From: Haliotis rufescens
Taxonomy: Eukaryota
Length of the DNA stretch: 64,000 bases
Direction: 5' to 3'
NCBI RefSeq assembly: GCF_023055435.1
Contig: NW_025963791.1
Span: forward strand, 6,200,001-6,264,000
Made by a program: the position numbers and the translations under genes. Positions 632-64,000 of this stretch are shown piece after piece; the stretch's first letter is position 1, and the number at the start of each line of letters is the position of its first letter. Under the pieces are notes generated by a model. It ran no database searches. It was not told the origin of the DNA and saw only the letters and a list, made by a program, of their open reading frames with translations.

Positions 632-798
632 GTGAGTGAGTGAGTATGGTTTTACGCCGCTTTTAGCAATATTCCAGCAATATCACGGCGGGGGTCACCA
701 GAAATGGGCTTCACACATTGTACCCATGTCGGGAACCGAACCCGGGTCTTCAGCGTGACGAGCGAACGCTTTAACCACTAGGCTACCCGACCGCCACC
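632..798 (-). mobile_element. SINE family A (tRNA-Asp-like head, (TCAC)n tail), full length
   Basis: A box TAGCCTAGTGG, B-box-like GGTTCGGTTCC, GTC anticodon remnant; 13-bp TSD aatcagttatata (619-631, 799-811). Confidence 0.9.
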
Positions 799-1659
799 AA
801 TCAGTTATATAATACCTATAAGGGATCATATGAGATACGGAGTCATTAGGACTTTCAACACGATCAGTAAATTACACATGTGGTGATAACAAACCTGCGC
901 CAGTGTTTGAAAAGTGCCATGGAAACACTAATTAACACAATTAAGCATAAACCGTAGAAATAACAACTGGCTGTTGACAAAGCCTTTCTGCTTTACCAAC
1001 GTGTTAATATAGAGATGAACGATGCTCTCCTGGTGCTATATTCCCTGGACTGGTTAGGTAGGTTGGACGCGGCTCCGGTAGCGGAAGAGCTGCATGCTAA
1101 TGCTGGTGTTTTAGCAAACCAGCTGCGACGTTAATCATTCATAGAGGAACGGAACAATGAAGGACCTGGTACACTGGTGCATCACGCACGTATTGAGAGA
1201 CGGAAGGAAACGGACAACTGTCAGGGGATTTGAGAAATTGGAAAAACAGGAAATCGAAGAGGGACATCAAAAGTAAAAGTTAACTGGAGTCATTTATAGA
1301 TTGAACCATCAATAATGTATAGTCGATTTAAAGAAATCTTGTTCATATTTTTTCATTCTTGTTTTTTTTTAAGTTATGAAAGAATGTATTGGAGTAATGT
1401 TTTGAAATCATTTTTGGGAAGGTTTCGTAACATTGATCCATAAATAAACGGCTTATGTGTGATGTATTAATCTTTTCCAGACATAATTCTATATCTTCTT
1501 ATGGAGACCTAGCTCGCCTCACTGGCCGAAGCGAGTGTCTTAGCCTGTTATCGACCGCTAATATCAGTGGAGATGGTCCCCTAGAAATATCCACCTTTTC
1601 CATTACGACGACAAGCAAGTCTTAAACCTTTGCTTACAAGCCCTTGTGCTCATAAATGC

Positions 1660-3239: not shown

Positions 3240-4232
3240 ACAGACATGTAACTGGATGATGTCATTAGCATATGTCATACAAGAAACATGTACCTGAATT
3301 GTCATTAACATTTGTCATACCAGAGACATGTACCTGAATTGTCATTAACATTTGTCATACCAGAGATGTGTACCTTAATTATGTCATTAACATGTGAGTC
3401 CTCCCACGGACATGTAACTGGATGATGTCATTAGCATATGTCATACAAGAAACATGTACCTGAATTGTCATTAACATTTGTCATACCAGAGGCATGTAGC
3501 TGAATTGTCATTAACATCAGTCATACCAGAGACATGTACCTTAATTATGTCATTAACATGTGAGTCCTCCCACGAACATGTTACTGAATTATATCATTAA
3601 CATATGTCATACCAGAGATATGTAGCTGAATTGTCATTAACATCTGTCATACCAGAGACATGTACCTTAATTATGTCATTAACAGGTGAGTCCTCCCAAA
3701 GACATGTATCTGAATTGTCATTAGCATGTGTCTTACCAGATATATGTACCTTAATTGTCAATTACATGTTCATACCAGAGACATGTACCTTATTTATGTC
3801 ATTAACGTGTCAGTCCTCCCACGGACATGTATCTGAATTGTCATTAGCATGTATCATACTAGAGATATGTAACTGAATTATGTCATTAACATATGCATCA
3901 TACCACATACATGTTTCGTTTGTTGTTGTTTAACGCCGCACTCAACACTATTCCAGCTATATGACGGCGGTCTGTAATTAATCGAGTCTGGACCAAACAA
4001 TCCAGTGATTGATATCATGAGTATCGATCCACGCAATTGGGGTACGATGACATGTATCAACCAACTCAGCGAGCCTGACCACCCGAATCCCTTAGTCGCC
4101 TCTTACGACATGTATGGTTTACTGATTTATTCTAACCCGGATCTTCACGTGTACCACAGACATGTAACTGAATTATGTCATTAACATGTGAATCATACCA
4201 CAGACAAGCAACTGAATTATGCCATTAACAAG
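3240..4232. repeat. 40-44-bp minisatellite interrupted by family B
   Basis: cataccagagacatgtacctgaattgtcattaacatttgt variants. Confidence 0.85.
3915..4151 (-). mobile_element. Family B short retroposon (structured non-tRNA head, (AAAC)n tail), single-hairpin type, inserted in a minisatellite
   Basis: Flanks taccaca(t/g)acatgt at 3901-3914 and 4152-4165; 5' end at cacgtgaagat. Confidence 0.85.
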
Positions 4233-8022: not shown

Positions 8023-8362
8023 TTAGAGACGCTGATCAAGACGGGATGCAACACAACTGAGTCACCTTACGTCCAGCGCATTTTATTTCGGTATGAACCA
8101 CCCAGGTGAAAACAACTCATGACGCTCCACATAGGGGCACTTATACGTTTTGAAAGATATATTAGACTGTTTCTTCAGAGTGAGTGAGTTGAGTTTAAGC
8201 TCAGTGTTAGTTTTGGCCTCTTGCAAGGTATGCTGGTCGTAAGACCAGTTGAATCGGGTTGTCAGGCTCGGTGACTTGGTTGATGGTGTTTCATCGTTAT
8301 ATGGCATAAACTGTTTAGCATTTGAAGGCCTAAGGGATACTAACAAATGTCATACCATTACA

Positions 8363-8524
8363 GTGAGTGAGTATGGTTTAACGCCGTTTTTAGCAATATT
8401 CCAGCAATATCACGGCGGGGGACACCAGAAATGGGCTTCACACATAGTGCCCATGTCGGGAATCGAACCCGGGTCTTCGGCGTGACGAGCGAACGCTTTA
8501 ACCACTAGGCTACCAAGCCGCCTC
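8363..8524 (-). mobile_element. SINE family A, full length
   Basis: 12-bp TSD cataccattaca (8351-8362, 8525-8536). Confidence 0.9.
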
Positions 8525-8580
8525 CATACCATTACATATTTATACATATCACAAAGAATCAGCTCGATGTGTCATGAAGC

Positions 8581-13995: not shown

Positions 13996-14410
13996 ATCAG
14001 GCTCGGTGACTTAGTTTACTGGAAGTCATCGTAACTCGACGTCATGAGACGTTGTTCACGTTATCACCAACAGATTTGTACTGGTCCAGACTCGATTCTC
14101 CACAGCCGCCATCGTTAGTTGGGACCCCGTGAAGATCCGGGGTAGAATATGTCTTCATCAACCAATGCTTGCCGCAAAAGGCGACTATGCTTGTCGTAAG
14201 AGGCTGACTTGGTTGATGCATGTCATCGTATCCCAATTGCGTGGATTGATGCTCATGATGTAAATCACTGGATTATCTGGTCCAGACTCGATTATTTACA
14301 GACCACCGTCATATAGCTGAAATATTGCTGAGTGCGGCGTTAAACAACAAACAAACAAATCATATAGTTGGAATGTTGTTGACTGTGGCTTTAAACTACA
14401 AACACACAAA
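13996..14410 (+). mobile_element. Old headless family B copy interrupted by a younger B copy
   Basis: Body 13996-14124; tail resumes about 14360-14410. Confidence 0.7.
14126..14358 (+). mobile_element. Family B, duplicated-hairpin type, small internal deletion
   Basis: Starts cccgtgaagatccggggtagaat; ends gttaaacaacaaacaaac. Confidence 0.85.
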
Positions 14411-15580: not shown

Positions 15581-15814
15581 GACCCATTAAGATCCGGGTT
15601 AGAATAGGTCTTTAGCAACCCATGCTTGCCGTAAAAGGCGGGTCGCATGGTCAGGTTCACTGACTTCGAAGCATGTTATTGTTTGTATCCCAAATGCGTA
15701 GATCGATGCTCATGATGTCAATCCCCGGATTGTCTGGTTCAGACTCGATTATATACAGACTGCCGCCATAGAGCTAGAACATTGCTGAGTGCGACGTTAA
15801 ACAACAAACAAACG
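15581..15814 (+). mobile_element. Family B
   Basis: 10-bp TSD agttttataa (15571-15580, 15815-15824). Confidence 0.85.
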
Positions 15815-20078: not shown

Positions 20079-20326
20079 GTATATGTATGTACAATCTGTA
20101 AAATCTGTGTCATAGCAATAAATGACACGAATTGATTGTCCATCACACTTTAAATGATCATACTGCATCATCTACAAAGTAGCGGATCGTCATTTACGAA
20201 TCCCAGATTCGCCCGATTGTGATCACTGATTTGAGTTTCAGCGGAGTGGATTTGGCTTCTAAGACTTACATCGTTTTGATCTGACAGGCCGTGAAATGAT
20301 AAAAATACTGTTGGTGAAGCTTATTG

Positions 20327-20582
20327 TTTGTTGTTTAGCGCCGCACCTAGCAATATTCCAGCTATATGACGGCCGTCTGTGAATAATCGAGTCTGAACCA
20401 GACAATCCAGTGATTGACAGCATGCGCATCGATCCACACAATAGGGATCGATGACGTGTATCATTCAAGTCAGCGAGCCTGACCACCCGATCCCGTTAGT
20501 CGCCTCTTTTTAAAAGCATAGTCGCCTTTTACGGCAAGCATGGGTTACTGAAGACCTATTCTACCCCGGATCTTCAGGGGTC
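20327..20582 (-). mobile_element. Family B, duplicated-hairpin type
   Basis: 12-bp TSD tgaagcttattg (20315-20326, 20583-20594). Confidence 0.9.
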
Positions 20583-22425: not shown

Positions 22426-22642
22426 CCTGTGAAGATCCGGGTTAGAAGTGATCTTCAGTAACCCAAGCGTGTGGTAAGAAGCGACTAAAGGGATCTGGTA
22501 GTCAGACTCGCCAACTTTGTTGATCGTATCCCAGTTGCGTTAATAGATGCTCATAGTGCCAATCAATGGATTGTCTGGTTGATATTTTAATAGTTACAGA
22601 CCACAGTCACAACTGTAAAATTGCGGAGTGCAGTGTTAAACA
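22426..22642 (+). mobile_element. Family B, diverged single-hairpin type
   Basis: Head cctgtgaagatccgggttagaagtgatcttcagtaaccc; degenerate tail. Confidence 0.8.

Positions 22643-23438: not shown

Positions 23439-23490
<52 letters not shown>
23417..23490. repeat. (TAC)n-(TAG)n inverted microsatellite
   Basis: Direct reading. Confidence 0.9.
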
Positions 23491-23693
23491 CCCGCTATAT
23501 GACGACAGTCTGTAAATAATCGAGTCTGGACCAGACAAACCACTAATTGACATCATGTGCATCGATCCACGCAATTGGGGATACGATGACATGCATGATC
23601 CAAGTCAGCGAGCCCGACCACCCTATCCCGTTAGTCGCCTTTTACAACAAACATGGGTTGCTGACGACAAATTCTAACCCGGATCGTCACGGG
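23491..23693 (-). mobile_element. Family B, single-hairpin type, tail end replaced by microsatellite
   Basis: Head cccgtgacgatccgggttagaatttgtcgtcagcaaccc on minus strand. Confidence 0.85.
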
Positions 23694-30392: not shown

Positions 30393-30830
30393 ACTCCGTG
30401 ACGATCCGGGTGAGAGTGTCTTCAGCAACCCATGCTTTCCGTAAGAGTAGACTGTGCTTGTCGTAAGTGAGTGAGTGAGGCTTTACGCCGCTTTTAGCAA
30501 TATTCCAGCAATATTACGGCGGGGGACACCAGAAATGAGCTTCACACATCGTACCCATGTCGGGAATCGAACACGGGTCTTCGGCGTGACGAGCTAACGC
30601 TTTAACCACTAGGCTACCCGACCGTCCCGCTTGTCGTAAGAGGCGACTAATGGGATAGGGTGGTCAGGTTCACTGACTTGGTTGATGCATGTGTCATCGT
30701 ATCCCAAATGCGTGGATCGATGCTCATGACATCCATCAGTGGATTGTCTAGTCCAGACTCGATTAATTTCAGATTGCCGTCATGTAAGTGGAATATTGCT
30801 GAGTGCGGCGTTCAACAACAAACAGACAAA
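30393..30830 (+). mobile_element. Family B interrupted by SINE A
   Basis: TSD cacaaa(a/g)tgttgc (30380-30392, 30831-30843). Confidence 0.85.
30468..30628 (-). mobile_element. SINE family A nested in a family B copy
   Basis: 12-bp TSD gcttgtcgtaag (30456-30467, 30629-30640), which is family B sequence. Confidence 0.9.
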
Positions 30831-31349
30831 CACAAAGTGTTGCTATTTTATTTTTTATTTTTTTTAAATTTAATATTTTGTTAACGACCTATGTCCTAAT
30901 CGCGCTATTACCTATAACTACATCTGCAGGGTGTTTCTTCATGGAGAAACACGTTCATGAAATAATGAAACAATGACATACCTTTAGAGTTTTTTGTTCC
31001 TGCCTAAAGACGTACAAACAACTCAATATTTTGAATCGACAAAACTCATCTTATTTCAGAATATATATGTTCAGTGATTTATGTTAATATCGGCACTTAT
31101 TGGGAGATTTATGGTATCCTGGTTCTCCACGAGCTATACATGTTTATTTGTTAAAGATGTAAAATTTATCAATATCTCTGTCAATATATATATAAAATGA
31201 TGTGCTGCGTCGCACATAACAATTAGATTAATATCGTACGATTTTTAATTTTCGAAACACAAAATACTTAAACCTCCTTTTGCCGTAAATATGAAATGTC
31301 AACCCCCGAGGATAACCATCCTCAATTATCCGACGAAACAGATTCCACT

Positions 31350-31936: not shown

Positions 31937-32165
31937 CCCATTGGGGTTTCCGGATTAGAATATGTCCCAAGCAATATATGCTTGTCGTATGAGGCGAATT
32001 AATGTATCGGTTGGTCAATATAATCTAGTTGATAGCGTTTCCTGTTACCCCGACGGCGTCGATCGTATCTTATAACATCACTAGCTTGTCTGGCCCAAAC
32101 ACGATTATTTCAGGCCGCCCTCCTATGGCTGGAATATTGCCAAGTGCCGTTTTAAACAACCAACA
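31937..32165 (+). mobile_element. Ancient or divergent family B relative
   Basis: Colinear with B: ccggattagaata, atgcttgtcgtatgaggcga, ttgtctggcccaaacacgattatt, gctggaatattgc...ttaaacaac. Confidence 0.75.
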
Positions 32166-33383
32166 TATCCGATATACAGTTTAAAGACCAGGGACGTCGA
32201 GGAATTTTTTATTTCTGAAACAATTTCTGGGTCACACGGTGCCAGTATCACTAAAGGAAATTTACCAGAATAGCTTTTTTAGTTTAGAATACATGTGATT
32301 TTCTCATCTTGGCGTCATGCGCCGATCAATCTGTCCCACTTACCGCTGTGCTATGTCTCTCATTGGTCTGTGGAGTAATCAGACTGAACTGAATAGGATT
32401 TGCCTTCCACTGAGCAGGGTCTAAGCATTTGAAGATGAAGATATGTAATTGTCGTTGTTTGGTTTTAAAACATGCTTACTGCTGTGAGGGGCAAGGAGTG
32501 CAAGGAACTTATGATGTTTCTAGATTCGCCAGCAACATACCCATGCTCGTTCTTACAGGTTTCACCACAGTGGTAACGTGTAAGACTTGCACCTCTTTCC
32601 TCTCACATTAAGCTGTCACGCCGTGATAAAACTGAAATCCAGTTCATAACGGCATTAACATCACAATTACTCTTTTAAGCGTTTGACGACCGTGATATAT
32701 AATCATACCCATGATTGCTGCATGTTCCGTTGTGCGATATATAACTGTATTGCTTGGCCTTGTAACAATTGCAACTGTTTGTTCCAGAGCATGGTCTTCA
32801 ACCTCTGACAACTGTGTAATATCATTTTGTTGTTGTTTGGTCATGGCTAAATATGACCAGATATTAACCATCCTGGACTATCTCCATGGCAACATAGTGA
32901 TGAAAATCATAATCAGTGATGACATGTCTTTTCGAAAGGGTCAGCATGTCCTGACCGGTAGATGCTCGAGAGAGCATGGTCATCTGAAGTTTCAAACGTT
33001 ATTGCTTGGTCGGAAACAGTCGTGGGTGAAATATCCTTCATGATCCTAAATGCATGTTTTTCAGCATTTAAACACTGTGCCATATACCCGTTATTTCTTG
33101 TTATGATGTACTACTATACAGTGTGAACCTGGCACGTTGATTGGTTTGTCACAAAAACATCCGCTTCCTATTCTGGTTGAGACAGCTTTTGCTGGGATGA
33201 TGCTTGTCTGAAAATGACAACGCCACAATGGGTTGGAATGTCTCGCGCCATGATAAGGATATAGTGTCAGAAGCACCTGGAACTAAACAAATTAAGGCAA
33301 AATAAATGCTTGATAAGTCAAGATAAATAAATGACATAAGCAAACATGTACCCGTTTTCGTACTCAGCCAGTATTAAAGCTGC

Positions 33384-33621
33384 CCCGTGAAGATCCGGGT
33401 TAGAATAGGTCTTCATCCTACGTTTGCTGTAAGATGCGACTATGCTTGTCGTAAGAGGCGACTAACGGGATCGGGTGGTCAGGCTCGCTGACATGGTTGA
33501 CGGCAGATCGATGCTCATGATATCAATCACTGGGTTGTGTGGTCCAGACTCGATTATTTACAGACCACCGTCTTATAGCTGGAATATTGCGGCGTTAATA
33601 ACAAACAAACAAACAAACAAA
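33384..33621 (+). mobile_element. Family B, duplicated-hairpin type
   Basis: Starts cccgtgaagatccgggttagaataggtcttca; (AAAC)n tail. Confidence 0.85.
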
Positions 33622-43726: not shown

Positions 43727-43891
43727 TGAGTGAGTAAGTATGGTTTTACGCCGCTTTTAGCAATATTCCAGCAACATCACGGCGGGGGACACCAGAAATG
43801 GGCTTCACACATTGTACCCATGTCGGGAATCGAACCCGGGTCTTCGGCGTGTCGAGCGAACGCTTTAACCACTAGGCTACCCGACCGCCCC
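43727..43891 (-). mobile_element. SINE family A, young, inserted in Naiad-like remnant
   Basis: 16-bp TSD tataggattgtcagag (43711-43726, 43892-43907). Confidence 0.9.
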
Positions 43892-49404: not shown

Positions 49405-49626
49405 TGAGAAAATCCGGGGTAGAATTGGTCTTCAGCAATCCATGCTTGCCGTAAAGAGACGACTAACGGGATCGGGTGGTTAGGTTCGCTGACATGGTTG
49501 ATGCATGTCATCGTATCCCAATTGTGTGGATCGATGCTCATGATATCAATCACTGGATTGTCTGGTCCAGACTCGATTATTTACAGACCGTCGTCATATA
49601 GCTGGAACAACAAACAAAACCAAAAC
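49405..49626 (+). mobile_element. Family B, single-hairpin type
   Basis: Eroded 5' end, intact body. Confidence 0.8.
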
Positions 49627-49822: not shown

Positions 49823-50046
49823 GGGGGCACGAGTGGCCCAGGCGTCTGAGGCGCCGCAGTTCGCTGTGCAGAGTTGCGTCCCTTGGGCACGTCAGAAACC
49901 TATGATTGTCGGTTCGAATCCCGGTGCACCCCGATTATGTTTCTAGGTTTGTCAGCATCATACCCGTGCTCGTTAAGCTGACACGCCGTGATATAACTGG
50001 AATAGTGTTAAAAGCGGCGTTAAACCCGACTCACCCACTCACTCAC
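49823..50046 (+). mobile_element. SINE family D lacking the V-like domain
   Basis: Head intact; cccgtgctcg joins directly to ttaagctgacacgccg tail. Confidence 0.85.
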
Positions 50047-50070
50047 CCAACAGTACATGTAAGCGAACTG

Positions 50071-54797: not shown

Positions 54798-55045
54798 TTT
54801 GTTTGTTTGTTGTTTAACGCCACACTCAGCAATATTCCAGCTGTATGACTGCGGTCTGTAACCAGACAATCCAGTGAATATCATGAGCATCGATCCACGC
54901 AATTGACATCGATGACATGCATCAACCAAGTCAGCGAGCCTGACCACCTGATCCCGTTAGTCGCCTCTTGCGACAAGCATAGTCGCCTTTTACGGCAAGC
55001 ATGGGTTGCTGAAGACCTACTCTAGCCCGGATCTTCATGGGCCTC
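54798..55045 (-). mobile_element. Family B, duplicated-hairpin type
   Basis: 9-bp TSD gctccaatt (54789-54797, 55046-55054). Confidence 0.9.
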
Positions 55046-55251: not shown

Positions 55252-55367
55252 GTGAGTGCGTATTGTTTTACGACGCTTTCAGCAATATTCCAGCAATATC
55301 ACGGTTGGGGACAGCATACAGATGTGGGGAATCGAATCCGGGTCTACTTCGTGACGAGCGAACGCTT
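55252..55367 (-). mobile_element. SINE family A, cut by assembly gap
   Basis: Tail and B box present, runs into Ns. Confidence 0.75.
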
Positions 55368-55505
55368 NNNNNNNNNNNNNNNNNNNNNNNNNNNNNNNNN
55401 NNNNNNNNNNNNNNNNNNNNNNNNNNNNNNNNNNNNNNNNNNNNNNNNNNNNNNNNNNNNNNNNNNNNNNNNNNNNNNNNNNNNNNNNNNNNNNNNNNNN
55501 NNNNN
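55368..55505. other. Assembly gap (N run)
   Basis: Direct reading. Confidence 0.99.
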
Positions 55506-60828: not shown

Positions 60829-61090
60829 CCCGTAAAGATCCGGGGTAGAATCTTCAGCAACCCATGCTTGCCGTAAAAGGCGACTATGCTTGTCGTAAGA
60901 GGCGACTTACGGGATCGGGTGGTCAGGCTCGCTGACTTGGTTGATGCATGTCATCTATCCCAATTGCGTGGATCGATAATCATGATATCAATCACTGGAT
61001 TGTCTGGTCCAGACTCGATTATTTACTGATCCCGTCATATAGCTGGAATATTGCTGAGTGCCGCGTTTAACAACAAACAAACCTACCAAC
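60829..61090 (+). mobile_element. Family B, duplicated-hairpin type, ending about 55 bp before exon 3
   Basis: Starts cccgtaaagatccggggtagaat; full body and tail. Confidence 0.85.
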
Positions 61091-61293: not shown

Positions 61294-61737
61294 GTAAGTC
61301 TATCAGTCTTGACATCTTATTTCTTCACTTTCTATAAACAATAGCACGTTAATTTAAGGGGTCATAAATCTTCACACATCCCCACCCCCACCCTTTACAA
61401 AAAACACAGTCCGTAACAGTTGTTTTGTGTTGAGCTTTAGAGGTTGCATGATTAGAAAACATATTCCGCTAACAATGTAACATAACAATATGAATAATTC
61501 ATTTTTATTTATTTTTTTACGTGTTTGTATCGTTATCTATCGTGTAGTTGTCCGATTTTCGATCACGAACGTTGATACTGCTTAATTTCGTTTATCCGAC
61601 ATACCCGTTAATCATATGCAACCAACCATGTCGGATTAAGGGGGCTTGACTGAATTGACAATTGTTCACTGAGTGCGCGGATCTTCGTACTGAAGCAACT
61701 TGATGCTAGGAAACATAGGGTTGTTTTAAATGTCCAC

Positions 61738-61860
61738 TGTACGGAATCCTGGAAGGGACATTGTCGCGTTGTCGCAAAAAGTGCGAAAATTAACCCAAGC
61801 GCGACAATGCGATAACAACGTTTTGAAAACGCGACAATGTCCCTACTACGATTCCATACA
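61738..61860. mobile_element. Palindromic MITE
   Basis: TIRs tgtacggaatc...agggacattgtcgcgtt / aacgcgacaatgtccct...gattccataca. Confidence 0.6.
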
Positions 61861-61920
61861 AATGTCTATCATCGTAACCCTATGAAAGTCTTGGTTAATA
61901 AAGTATTTCGTCAATCACAG

Positions 61921-62211
61921 GGGGGCACGGGTGGCCTAGTCTTCTAAGGCGCCGCGATTCGCTGAGCAGAGTTGCGTCCCTTGGGCGCGCCAGAAACCTG
62001 TGGTTGTGGGTTCGAATCCCGGTTCGCCCCGATTATGTTTCTAGGTTTGTCAGCACCATGCCCGTGCTCGTGGGTTTCACCGAAGTGGTTAACGTCTGAG
62101 ACCTGCATCACTTCGGGCTTTCCTCCCACATTAAGCTAACACGCCGTGATATAACTTGAATACTGTTAAAAGCGGCGTTAAACCCAACTCACTCACTCAC
62201 TCACTCACTCT
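61921..62211 (+). mobile_element. SINE family D (tRNA-Leu-like head, V-like domain), full length
   Basis: TSD tca(a/g)tcacag (61911-61920, 62212-62221). Confidence 0.9.
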
Positions 62212-62660
62212 TCAGTCACAGACGTAGCACGTGTATTTCTGTGCCCTATTATTGCTACATACACAGTAAATATATATTTTTTTATTAACTAATATGAATG
62301 AATAAACTAAACCAAATAAATTATTAAACTATTTGACACAATTTCATACAAATCGTAATCATTATTATTATCTTCTAAAAATGAAAGAGTACAACAGTTA
62401 AGACTGCACAACTTGTTCAGAGTATCCAGTTGCTATAGGGCTGAAAAATAATGCCGATGCGACGTTAAATTTTCACTCACTCACTCACTCACTCACTCAC
62501 TCACTCACTCACTCTTGCGTGATCTGCTGAGCGTCAGTTTGAATCCAAGATTCGTGCCGGTTATGAACCTTGTCCCTCCAGAACTCTACTCGAATTTCTC
62601 TAGTCGAGTAAAATCCAACCCTCTCACTCAGTCACTCTATGTAAACACATGATGGGGATG

Positions 62661-62925
62661 CCCGTGAAGAGCCGGGTTAGAATAGGTCTTCAGGAACCAA
62701 TGCTTGCCGTAAAAGGTGACCATGCTTGTCGTAAGAGGCGACTAACGGGATCGGGTGGTCAGGCTCGCTGACTAGGTTGATGCATGTCATCGATCCCAAT
62801 TGCATGGATCGATGCTCATGATGTCAATCACTGGATTGTCTGGTCCAGACTCGATTATTTACAGACCGCCGTCATATAGCTGGAATACTGCTGAGTGTGG
62901 CGTTAAACAACAAACCAACAAACAA
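62661..62925 (+). mobile_element. Family B, full length reference copy
   Basis: Perfect 14-bp TSD acatgatggggatg (62647-62660, 62926-62939) places the 5' end exactly at CCCGTGAAG. Confidence 0.92.
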
Positions 62926-64000
62926 ACATGATGGGGATGACTCGAATCTATAAACGTCCTGCATCCCTTTGGACTTTTCTCCCACATCAACACCCCGTTA
63001 CTGAAATACTGTTTGAAGCGACATTAAACCTATGCGCTCACTATAAACACTATAAATAGTCACTTGGTTATACACATGATTACCGTTTTTAACGTGATTT
63101 TTCACTTTTGTAAGTTATCACAAGTGTTCAAGTACGCACATATAGCCATTACCCCGACTTACTAAAAATACAAATATGTTCTCATGTCTATAAGACATAA
63201 TTCTATTGGAACGCTACGCCGTTAGTTTAACCAGGTTCCAGACCTGATTGTGTTGTAGAAGCCACGGGTGATATTATGAGGCGACCTATTCCACGAACTA
63301 GCTGACACGGGCATAATACAATAACGCCCCATAAATAATCATTATCGCCATCCTGAAAATTACCAGACCGTACATAATATCTATTTTGAGCTGACTGTTT
63401 TCAATAATCTGATAATCTTCACCAAAGCACAGGCTGACTATGTTTTGCCCATCACCGCAACAGACAATAGAGTTAGACAAAGACAGTTTGCTTCACTTCA
63501 CTCACGAGTCGGAATCTATATAAACAATAGTGTGCCACGCGTGATTTATCCTCGTAAACATTCATGATGAATTCAGTCAATGTTGATCTGATTTCTTTAT
63601 TACTTTACAAAGTTTTTTTCGAAAGATATTTTTTCGAACAATGAGAGCTGATGGATATGTTGTTGTTTTTAATGAAAAAATAGTTCTTGAAGATATATAA
63701 AAGTCTATATTTCTCCAAATAGACGCAGTGTATGCAGCGTTAGAGACGGGTGCTATATTTTCTATGTATTTCTAAATTGACACATAGCTTTCAATAGGTT
63801 TAAATTTGCTTAAGTTTTAATAAGGAGGCTTGTGTCCTCTATGGTAGTAATATAGCTGAATATGGCTTTTCAAATAAATAAAAGCGAAAAAACCCTTTCC
63901 TTATTCATAAGGAATATCTGCCAAAAACAGATTCGATTGTACGATTCCGACTGTATCTTAAGCAGGTGTGTATGAATCACTATCAAATGGTGGTGATACC

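What the first reader, a model, noticed from the sequence alone, without database searches (positions are those of the whole stretch)
62661..62760. Family B retroposon begins with a conserved pseudoknotted RNA: candidate new ribozyme or structured head replacing the tRNA promoter
Seen: about 13 head-bearing copies of a ~240-265-bp element with TSDs and an (AAAC)n tail but no tRNA A box. TSDs put the 5' end at, or within 0-4 nt of, CCCGTG (62661, 4151, 15583, 20580, 30395, 55041). The consensus head folds as a closing stem CCCG/CGGG, an 8-bp stem UGAAGAUC/GGUCUUCA whose loop CGGGUUAGAAUA pairs (GGGU(U)/(A)ACCC) with the sequence just 3' of the stem as an H-type pseudoknot, a linker AUGC, a hairpin UUGYC-GUAARA-GGCGA, and an unpaired CUAA before the closing strand. 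Compensatory changes occur between copies (separate findings at 23640 and 31937). Established: many non-LTR elements (R2, RTE, L1Tc/ingi) use HDV-like ribozymes at their 5' ends to release themselves from read-through transcripts. Inference: the hairpin-CUAA-closing-stem end recalls HDV P4-J4/2-P2, but there is no upstream P1 and no 3-bp P3/7-nt L3, and it does not map onto hammerhead, twister or pistol. It could be an undescribed self-cleaving, 5'-protecting or promoter module that lets this element mobilise from host introns. Alternative: GAAGATCCGGGTTAGAAT resembles the tRNA B-box region of family A (GAAGACCCGGGTTCGATT), so a tRNA-remnant or Pol III origin is possible.
Basis: partly seen in the sequence, partly recalled or inferred. 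Interest (0 to 1): 0.85.

Follow-up and report, generated by a model that had tools for sequence, protein, structure and literature searches.

The report
LINE-derived head of an abalone SINE
The ~85-nt start of this very abundant short retroposon is not a new ribozyme as far as can be tested; it is the 5'-terminal piece of a LINE's untranslated leader, a kind of element ("LP-SINE") already described in abalone, and only one of the four proposed helices is supported by comparison.

Summary
The element is real. There are 13 head-bearing copies in the window, with target-site duplications (TSDs) and an (AAAC)n tail. There are over 3,200 candidate copies in this 1.33-Gb genome, which looks like a Haliotis genome.

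Of the proposed fold, only the 7-8-bp stem (UGAAGAUC/GGUCUUCA) around the conserved loop GG(G/U)UAGAAU is supported. It is rewritten with pairing kept in several older copies here and in a metagenome contig. The pseudoknot, the closing stem and a fixed register for the second hairpin are not supported. No copy folds more stably than shuffled sequence.

No Rfam family matches, ribozymes and tRNA included. A permissive HDV-like descriptor finds nothing.

The same head forms the sharp 5' boundary of a second repeat family. In that family it is followed, 0.7-1.0 kb downstream on the same strand, by an intact gag-like CCHC ORF1 whose only relatives are Haliotis proteins. This matches the "LP-SINEs" of Matetovici et al. 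2016 (LINE-5'UTR heads, reported in Haliotis).

First readers noted the same motif on other pieces of this genome.

The parts
62647..62660 (+). 5' target-site duplication ACATGATGGGGATG of the copy in question
   Evidence: Exact repeat of 62926-62939.
62661..62925 (+). Family B retroposon, long subtype. This copy starts at CCCG and lacks the usual GA.
   Evidence: It is 93-95% identical to at least 40 other genomic copies.
62661..62664 (+). CCCG, the 5' strand of the proposed closing stem
   Evidence: Invariant in family B, with no covariation. The partner strand is missing in other lineages.
62665..62672 (+). Stem 1, 5' strand (UGAAGAGC here; family consensus UGAAGAUC)
   Evidence: Covaries with 62685-62692.
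62673..62684 (+). Conserved loop CGGGUUAGAAUA, with core GG(G/U)UAGAAU
   Evidence: Conserved in family B, the LINE-type heads and the metagenome relative.
62685..62692 (+). Stem 1, 3' strand GGUCUUCA
62693..62703 (+). Linker GGAACCAAUGC. It contains the proposed pseudoknot partner and a possible GCA/UGC mini-helix.
   Evidence: The pseudoknot is not conserved. GCA/UGC is sequence-invariant, so it is uninformative.
62704..62725 (+). Extra copy of the hairpin-2 unit: the 22-nt duplication that defines the long subtype
   Evidence: Absent from the short subtype copies.
62726..62741 (+). Hairpin-2 block UUGUCGUAAGAGGCGA
   Evidence: The sequence is conserved from the LINE to the SINE and the metagenome relative. 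The pairing register is ambiguous.
62742..62749 (+). CUAA plus CGGG, the 3' end of the head module
   Evidence: Homology between the LINE and the SINE, and the 74-nt tandem unit in L052, both end about here.
62865..62907 (+). Tail domain shared with the tRNA-headed SINE families A and C
   Evidence: 45 tail-only matches, most of them attached to tRNA heads.
62905..62925 (+). (AAAC)n-like terminal repeat
62926..62939 (+). 3' target-site duplication
60829..61090 (+). Family B copy
54798..55041 (-). Family B copy
33384..33618 (+). Family B copy
20326..20580 (-). Family B copy
14126..14359 (+). Family B copy with an internal deletion
15583..15813 (+). Family B copy with an internal deletion
3912..4151 (-). 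Family B copy, short subtype
22426..22642 (+). Family B copy, short and older subtype
23482..23693 (-). Family B copy, short subtype, with stem 1 pair A-U changed to C-G
30395..30832 (+). Family B copy interrupted by an inverted family A tRNA-SINE
49408..49607 (+). Family B copy, short subtype, with a damaged 5' end
31937..32170 (+). Divergent relative with stem 1 rewritten as UUGGGG/GUCCCAA

Best explanation
Family B is a LINE-mobilised, non-autonomous retroposon of the LP-SINE type. Its first ~85 nt (GA-CCCG, stem-loop 1, the GCA..UGC linker, the GUCGUAAGAGGCGAC block, CUAA) are the 5'-terminal module of the 5' UTR of an I/Nimb-like LINE living in the same abalone genome. This module is joined to a body and to a 3' tail domain that tRNA-headed SINEs here also use.

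Shown:
- the homology of the head between the SINE and the LINE-like family;
- its position at the 5' boundary of both;
- one covarying stem with a conserved loop.

Inferred, by analogy with I, jockey and L1Tc 5' ends:
- The module is carried because it lets each copy make a full-length RNA that starts at its own first base, as a downstream (internal) Pol II promoter.
- The stem-loop acts in the RNA, for example as a 5'-end mark bound by the LINE's proteins.
- It is not a tRNA remnant, and no evidence found here shows that it cleaves itself.
For: 1. A head-like sequence at L030:1056 (minus strand) is followed by a non-SINE leader and a gag-like CCHC ORF.
2. At least 39 genomic copies share that head, and their homology starts sharply at the same base. 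In at least 12 loci the head and the ORF1 region are collinear.
3. Head and intact ORF1 (open frames of 470 and 490 aa at C445 and C46, 265 aa at C201) lie on the same strand, 695-1016 nt apart, at C46:6462186/6461491, C445:31610603/31611298 and C201:4223615/4224631.
4. The ORF piece matches only Haliotis proteins among 1.84 billion representatives. These have the RRM-plus-CCHC-knuckle layout of LINE ORF1.
5. PMC4758252 describes TSD-flanked SINEs with ~70-bp heads taken from Nimb/RTE LINE 5' UTRs, including in Haliotis. In some, the body or tail is shared with tRNA-headed SINEs. Here the tail domain is shared with families A and C.
6. Stem 1 covaries. UGAAGAUC/GGUCUUCA in family B corresponds to UGGGGAC/GUCCCCA in L027, L039, L036, L038 and the LINE type, to UUGGGG/GUCCCAA in w31937, and to UGAGGAGC/GCUACUCA in metagenome contig L052. 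One family B copy has A-U changed to C-G.
7. No tRNA or ribozyme family matches.
8. Head units occur as tandem monomers in L052 (3+1 and 1+1 units) and in L039. This resembles LINE promoter monomers and is awkward for a unit that cuts itself off at its own 5' end.
Against: - No transcript data were available.
- Identity with the published Haliotis LP-SINE, or with Nimb-17_LMi, could not be checked. Figures and Repbase are not held.
- Family B has no polyadenylation signal before its tail repeats, unlike several published LP-SINEs.
- A DNA promoter by itself does not explain why the stem keeps its pairing.
- The start GACCCG does not resemble an arthropod initiator. This last point rests on my own knowledge.
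Confidence: 0.6

Rival explanations
1. The head is a self-cleaving ribozyme of an undescribed class. It cuts read-through host transcripts just 5' of GA-CCCG and so defines the 5' end of both the LINE RNA and the SINE RNA. HDV-like ribozymes do this in R2, RTE and L1Tc, and twister variants do it in Perere-3.
For: - The 5' end is fixed in both the SINE and the LINE-like family.
- There is a covarying stem with a conserved loop and conserved single-stranded blocks.
- There is a precedent for a ribozyme with no conserved upstream strand: in Perere-3 the P1 5' strand comes from the flank (PMC8501958).
- Loose resemblances exist. CUAA lies before a G-rich strand, as in HDV J4/2-P2. A 2-purine start is followed by a C-rich strand, as in a twister cleavage product.
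Against: - No ribozyme family in Rfam 15 matches at E up to 10.
- A permissive HDV-like descriptor gives 0 hits in four head variants, while 65 of 200 shuffles give at least one hit.
- The pseudoknot and closing stem that would form a compact core are not conserved.
- Stability is no better than that of shuffled sequence.
- Tandem heads persist in elements.
- The first base is G, where twister needs A (own knowledge).
Confidence: 0.12
2. The head has no promoter or catalytic role. It is an RNA handle bound by the LINE's ORF1 or ORF2 protein, comparable to the 5' protein-binding motif of R2. The SINE would keep it to be picked up and copied to full length, and transcription would come from neighbouring host promoters.
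For: - Pairing in stem 1 is kept while its sequence changes, which points to a role in RNA rather than DNA.
- The SINE has borrowed both ends of LINE-type RNA: the head and the tail domain.
Against: - Nothing here shows binding.
- It does not explain the exact GA start unless another process defines the end.
- An estimated copy number near 10^5 (about 60 heads in 264 kb, extrapolated) is easier to reach with a portable promoter. This last point is inference.
Confidence: 0.2
3. The head is a decayed tRNA 3' half (variable loop plus T arm). Its B-box-like GGGTTAGAAT still recruits TFIIIC, so the element would be an ordinary Pol III SINE.
For: - GAAGATCCGGGTTAGAAT resembles family A's GAAGACCCGGGTTCGATT. 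Local alignment gives p of about 0.005-0.008 for that subtype.
- There is no TTTT run inside the element (read from the sequence).
Against: - No tRNA model matches at E up to 10, and ARAGORN finds none.
- There is no A box.
- The box would lie at +15, too close to the start for a type 2 promoter. The critical C56 position is A (own knowledge).
- The youngest subtypes read GGGGTAGAAT.
- The LINE-type heads show no significant similarity (p 0.08-0.26).
- The same head leads an ORF1-coding element that Pol III would not transcribe.
Confidence: 0.03

Closest known systems
LP-SINEs (SINEs with a LINE-5'UTR-derived head; Matetovici et al. 2016, PMC4758252)
   Same: - Short, TSD-flanked and ending in short tandem repeats.
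- No head derived from a small RNA.
- The first ~70-85 nt are shared with the 5' end of a LINE leader.
- The tail is shared with tRNA-headed SINEs.
- Reported in Haliotis, and this genome looks like a Haliotis genome.
   Different: - Sequence identity with the published Hdi/Hmi_LP consensus could not be checked.
- Family B has no polyadenylation-signal hexamer before its (AAAC)n repeats.
- The paper did not describe the covarying stem-loop.
Pr77 / L1TcRz at the 5' end of the trypanosome L1Tc, NARTc and ingi elements
   Same: A ~77-nt 5'-terminal module is shared by autonomous and non-autonomous elements that otherwise differ, and it defines the RNA start.
   Different: Pr77 is a proven promoter and an HDV-like ribozyme. 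Here no HDV-like fold can be drawn, and neither activity has been tested.
Twister variants at the 5' end of Perere-3 (Schistosoma; PMC8501958)
   Same: A structured RNA begins exactly at the TSD boundary of a non-LTR element, and it needs no conserved upstream strand.
   Different: The conserved twister loops (UAA, GC, GUCCCAAGC, GUAAA, GAGGG) are absent, and the Rfam twister models do not match.
R2 5' RNA (HDV-like ribozyme plus 5' protein-binding motif)
   Same: A 5' RNA structure of a non-LTR element that is used at the RNA level.
   Different: R2 is site-specific, and its fold is a double pseudoknot. Here only a single hairpin is supported.
tRNA-derived SINEs (families A and C of this genome)
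   Same: They share the 3' tail domain and probably the same LINE partner.
   Different: Families A and C have A and B boxes and match the tRNA model. Family B does not.

Membership tests
LP-SINE | Short element with variable TSDs and 3' terminal short tandem repeats | tested here: met
   TSDs were found in 33 of 52 copies, with an (AAAC)n tail.
LP-SINE | Head homologous to the extreme 5' end of a LINE 5' UTR | tested here: met
   The head lies at the sharp 5' boundary of a multi-copy family that has a leader and a gag-like ORF1. An ORF2/RT was not shown.
LP-SINE | Similarity to the published heads (Nimb-17_LMi, I-3_DR, RTE-9_CPB, Hdi/Hmi_LP) | not testable with these tools
   Figures, supplements and Repbase are not held.
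LP-SINE | No tRNA, 5S, 7SL or snRNA head | tested here: met
   Rfam at gathering threshold and at E up to 10, and ARAGORN, find none.
LP-SINE | Polyadenylation signal just before the terminal repeats (seen in several, not all, published families) | tested here: not met
   Family B ends ...GCGGCGTTAAAC(AAAC)n with no AATAAA-type hexamer. The metagenome relative L052 does carry AATAAA.
HDV-like ribozyme | Nested double pseudoknot: P1 starting at the cleavage site, 3-bp P3 with a short L3, P2 closed 3' of a C-containing J4/2 | tested here: not met
   The descriptor gave 0 hits in 4 head variants, while 65 of 200 shuffles scored. The Rfam HDV, CPEB3 and drz models did not match.
Twister / twister-sister / hammerhead / pistol / hatchet | Match to the family covariance model and its conserved core nucleotides | tested here: not met
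   No match at E up to 10. The twister loop sequences from PMC8501958 Table 1 are absent.
Self-cleaving ribozyme (any class) | Site-specific self-scission | not testable with these tools
   This needs a bench assay or end-specific RNA sequencing.
tRNA-derived SINE | tRNA-like head with A and B boxes at type 2 promoter spacing | tested here: not met
   Only a B-box-like 11-mer is present, at +15, in one subtype.

The most novel reading that the evidence does not exclude
The stem-loop with its GG(G/U)UAGAAU loop, together with the invariant GCA...UGCUUGUCGUAAGAGGCGAC-UAA blocks, is the core of an undescribed catalytic or 5'-end-defining RNA. Nimb/I-type LINEs and the SINEs that copy their heads would share it, possibly across several animal phyla.
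Probability: 0.12. Interest if true: 0.8.

Novelty: new member of a known kind. Interest (0 to 1): 0.38.

Why it matters
LP-type heads show that a SINE can borrow a LINE's 5' end in place of a Pol III gene. Nobody has yet tested what that ~70-85-nt module does.

This genome offers three useful things:
- a very large, young family for study;
- LINE-like copies that carry the same head followed by an intact ORF1;
- one clearly covarying stem-loop to mutate.

Showing whether the module is a promoter, a protein handle or a ribozyme would explain how such elements reach very high copy numbers. The estimate here is about 10^5 copies, by extrapolation. It would also explain why unrelated LINE clades share this 5' end.

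As reported, however, the finding is a rediscovery with an over-drawn fold.

Tried and rejected

Searches that gave nothing:
- The protein atlas search on the 55-aa ORF piece.
- Pfam on the two short ORF pieces.
- The RVT_1 search of the genome. It listed 150 of 16,953 candidates, and none lies next to the three head-plus-ORF1 loci.
- RNAalifold on a plain MAFFT alignment. It missed stem 1 because the 5' strand was misaligned, and it returned only GCA/UGC and a GUCGU/GCGAC hairpin.

Readings considered and dropped:
- An HDV-like reading with P2 = CCCG/CGGG, J4/2 = CUAA and P4 = hairpin 2. It has no P1 strand, and the closing strand is not conserved.
- A P1 of GACCCG/CGGGUU. Only 8 nt lie between its strands, and it is lost in the young subtypes.
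- A twister-like reading with P2 = CCCG/CGGG, P3 = stem 1, P4 = GCA/UGC and P5 = hairpin 2. The conserved loops are missing and no model matches.
- G-C to A-U changes in the GUCG/CGAC register of hairpin 2, seen in 3 copies. Both changed positions are CpG decay sites, so I give these little weight.

A caution on the counts: the figures on alignment A4 come from an alignment fitted to the model. About 80 of its rows are one lineage, so they overstate the number of independent events.

Full report
**What is there**

The stretch 62661-62925 is one copy of a 235-267-bp retroposon. It is flanked by a perfect 14-nt TSD at 62647-62660 and 62926-62939. The window holds 13 head-bearing copies.

A search of the window's own 1.33-Gb genome gave 3,202 first-look candidates. 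All 40 that were scored are 93-100% identical to this copy over nearly its full length. In 359 kb of held sequence, a covariance model of the head found 112 matches. About 60 of these lie in 264 kb that was not chosen for containing a copy. If that region is typical, the genome holds on the order of 10^5 copies; this is an extrapolation.

There are two main forms. A short form has one GUCGUAAGAGGCGAC block. A long, evidently younger form has a 22-nt duplication of that block.

**The 5' end**

In 52 full-length copies, position -2 relative to CCCG is G in 40 and position -1 is A in 41. Positions further upstream are unbiased. Among 33 copies with a detectable TSD, the gap between the TSD and CCCG is most often 2 nt (17 copies); 10 copies show gaps of 3-5 nt.

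The copy at 62661 is one of the few without the GA.

**The proposed fold, helix by helix**

I then repeated the count on 112 model-aligned matches.

Stem 1 (UGAAGAUC/GGUCUUCA) is the only helix with real compensated change:
- L027:2170(-) reads UGGGGAC/GUCCCCA, a perfect 7-bp stem.
- The same GGGG/CCCC type occurs in L039:2833, L036:608 and L038:8222, and in damaged form in the L030 copy.
- The window relative at 31937 reads UUGGGG/GUCCCAA.
- The copy at 23693(-) has A-U changed to C-G.
- A metagenome contig from another organism (L052) reads UGAGGAGC/GCUACUCA. It has two further compensated pairs and one mismatch.
- The loop core GG(G/U)UAGAAU stays constant throughout.

One caveat applies. 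The roughly 80 family B copies are a single lineage, so the number of independent events is perhaps five to eight, not the 107 cells counted. That alignment was also fitted to the structure.

The closing stem CCCG/CGGG pairs in most family B copies but never covaries. Its 3' strand is missing in w31937, the L045 family, L050, L027 and L052.

The pseudoknot GGGUU/AACCC exists only in the older GGGTTAG subtype. The abundant young subtypes read GGGGUAG or UUCCGGGGUAG. The L034 subtype reads AGGCU without compensation. L052 and w31937 have no CCC partner at all.

Hairpin 2 is a strongly conserved sequence block. Different relatives favour different registers:
- GUCG/CGAC;
- CUGGUC-GUAA-GACCAG, at window position 8204.

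The three G-C to A-U changes in the second register fall on CpG sites.

Minimum free energies of ten heads have z-scores between -1.56 and +0.22 against shuffles. The predicted structures also differ from copy to copy.

**Known RNA families**

Rfam 15 gives no match on any head. I searched the window at gathering threshold and four regions at E up to 10. The only tRNA hits belong to the other SINE families. ARAGORN finds nothing.

A deliberately permissive HDV-like descriptor gave no solution for four head variants. It required a perfect 6-7-bp P1 starting in the first 6 nt, a 3-bp P3, an L3 of 5-9 nt, a P2 of at least 4 bp and a C in J4/2. The same descriptor scored in 65 of 200 shuffles.

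The twister loop sequences tabulated in PMC8501958 are absent.

The B-box resemblance to family A reaches p of about 0.005-0.008, but only for the GGGTTAGAAT subtype. It is not significant for the young subtype, for the LINE-type heads or against family C.

**Where the head comes from**

A weak hit at L030:1056(-) has the head followed by sequence unrelated to the family B body, and then by an ORF.

The evidence on that second family is as follows:
- At least 39 copies share this head, and their homology starts at the same base. That base aligns within 2-3 nt of the family B start.
- In at least 12 loci the head and the ORF region are collinear. These loci carry about 600 nt more than L030, which has an internal deletion.
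- The 55-aa ORF piece matched only six of 1.84 billion representative proteins.
- The four I looked up are annotated in Haliotis asinina, H. rufescens, H. cracherodii and H. rubra.
- They show the layout of non-LTR ORF1 proteins: an N-terminal RNA-binding-like half followed by CCHC knuckles. The assignment to ORF1 rests on that layout and on my knowledge of I/jockey/Nimb-type ORF1.
- The H. cracherodii protein matches this genome at up to 97% identity. There are 4,512 candidates, and many have open frames of 450-500 aa.
- At three loci, a head lies 695-1016 nt upstream of such an ORF1 match on the same strand: C46:6462186/6461491(-), C445:31610603/31611298(+) and C201:4223615/4224631(+).

I could not show the RT ORF downstream. 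No more genome letters were available, and the RVT_1 listing did not include those loci.

First readers of other windows of this genome noted the same motif at the exact 5' end of a "Nimb-like LINE". I treat those notes as agreeing leads only.

**Literature**

Matetovici et al. 2016 (PMC4758252) described "LP-SINEs". [quoted passage not shown] They were found in Littorina, Haliotis, oysters and scallops, sometimes sharing a body or tail with tRNA-headed SINEs.

The authors proposed a promoter role. They also pointed to L1Tc Pr77, which is both a promoter and an HDV-like ribozyme, as a parallel. No later paper in the held library uses these terms.

Family B fits this description. Its ~45-nt tail domain is shared with two tRNA-headed families in the window. 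The published sequences could not be compared because the figures and supplements are not held.

**How it probably works**

Shown here:
- the head is a module shared between the LINE-like family and the SINE;
- it lies at the 5' boundary of both;
- it contains one hairpin whose pairing has been maintained through sequence change.

Inferred:
- The module gives each copy a defined RNA start. The most likely mechanism is an internal Pol II promoter, as in I, jockey and L1Tc elements.
- The hairpin works in the RNA, for example as a binding site for the LINE's proteins.

Tandem head monomers fit a promoter-monomer picture better than a unit that removes everything 5' of itself. L052 has 3+1 and 1+1 units of 74 nt, and L039 has two heads. 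DNA-level duplication after insertion cannot be excluded, however, and the two-head arrangement of L039 is not a large family.

A novel ribozyme remains possible but has no positive support. I put it at about 0.12.

**Verdict**

This is a new member of a known kind of element. It has one new and modestly interesting detail, the covarying stem-loop, and it leaves a long-open functional question that can now be tested.

Noticed in passing
window 8370-8525(-), 43743-43886(-), 649-800(-); also L015, L037, L046 and other loci: Family A is a ~150-bp tRNA-headed SINE ending in (ACTC)n. Its ~45-nt pre-tail domain, CCGCCGTGATATTGCTGGAATATTGCTAAAAGCGGCGT, is the same module as the family B tail. The two families probably use the same LINE partner.
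   Followed up: partly
window 61900-62200(+), 49900-50050(+); L004, L007, L016, L029 and other loci: Family C is a longer tRNA-headed SINE (weak tRNA-Sec-like Rfam hit at 61920-62030). It carries the same tail domain and an (ACTC)n end.
   Followed up: no
G000:C2:27726594-27728013, C57:836055-836289, C223:30916106-30916700 (coordinates only): Head-derived units occur as tandem arrays with periods of about 61-70 bp, so satellite-like DNA has been built from the head.
   Followed up: no
L052 (metagenome contig FXBE01019355.1), 330-1020(-): In another organism, 74-nt head monomers stand in tandem (3+1 and 1+1 units). They lie in front of a ~250-bp body with AATAAA and a 19-mer terminal repeat, which looks like an LP-SINE with a variable number of monomers.
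   Followed up: partly
window 30468-30628: A family A SINE is inserted in inverse orientation into the head of a family B copy.
   Followed up: no
L044:483-578, L045:3377-3472, L046:2562-2657: The 3' half of the head (GCUUGUCGUA...CGCGACUAACG..AUCGGGUGGUCAGGCUCGCUGAC) also occurs inside a different repeated element that has no stem 1.
   Followed up: no
window 61730-61866: A long, near-perfect inverted repeat (GGGACATTGTCGCG...CGCGACAATGTCCC) gives weak miRNA-precursor-like Rfam hits. It is probably a small foldback or MITE-like element.
   Followed up: no
window, around 55305-55440: A run of 138 N lies next to a family A copy. I left it as it is.
   Followed up: no
G000, genome-wide: There is a very large load of apparently intact non-LTR genes: 16,953 RVT_1 candidates, many with open frames of 1260-1279 aa, and 4,512 ORF1 candidates with open frames of 450-500 aa.
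   Followed up: no
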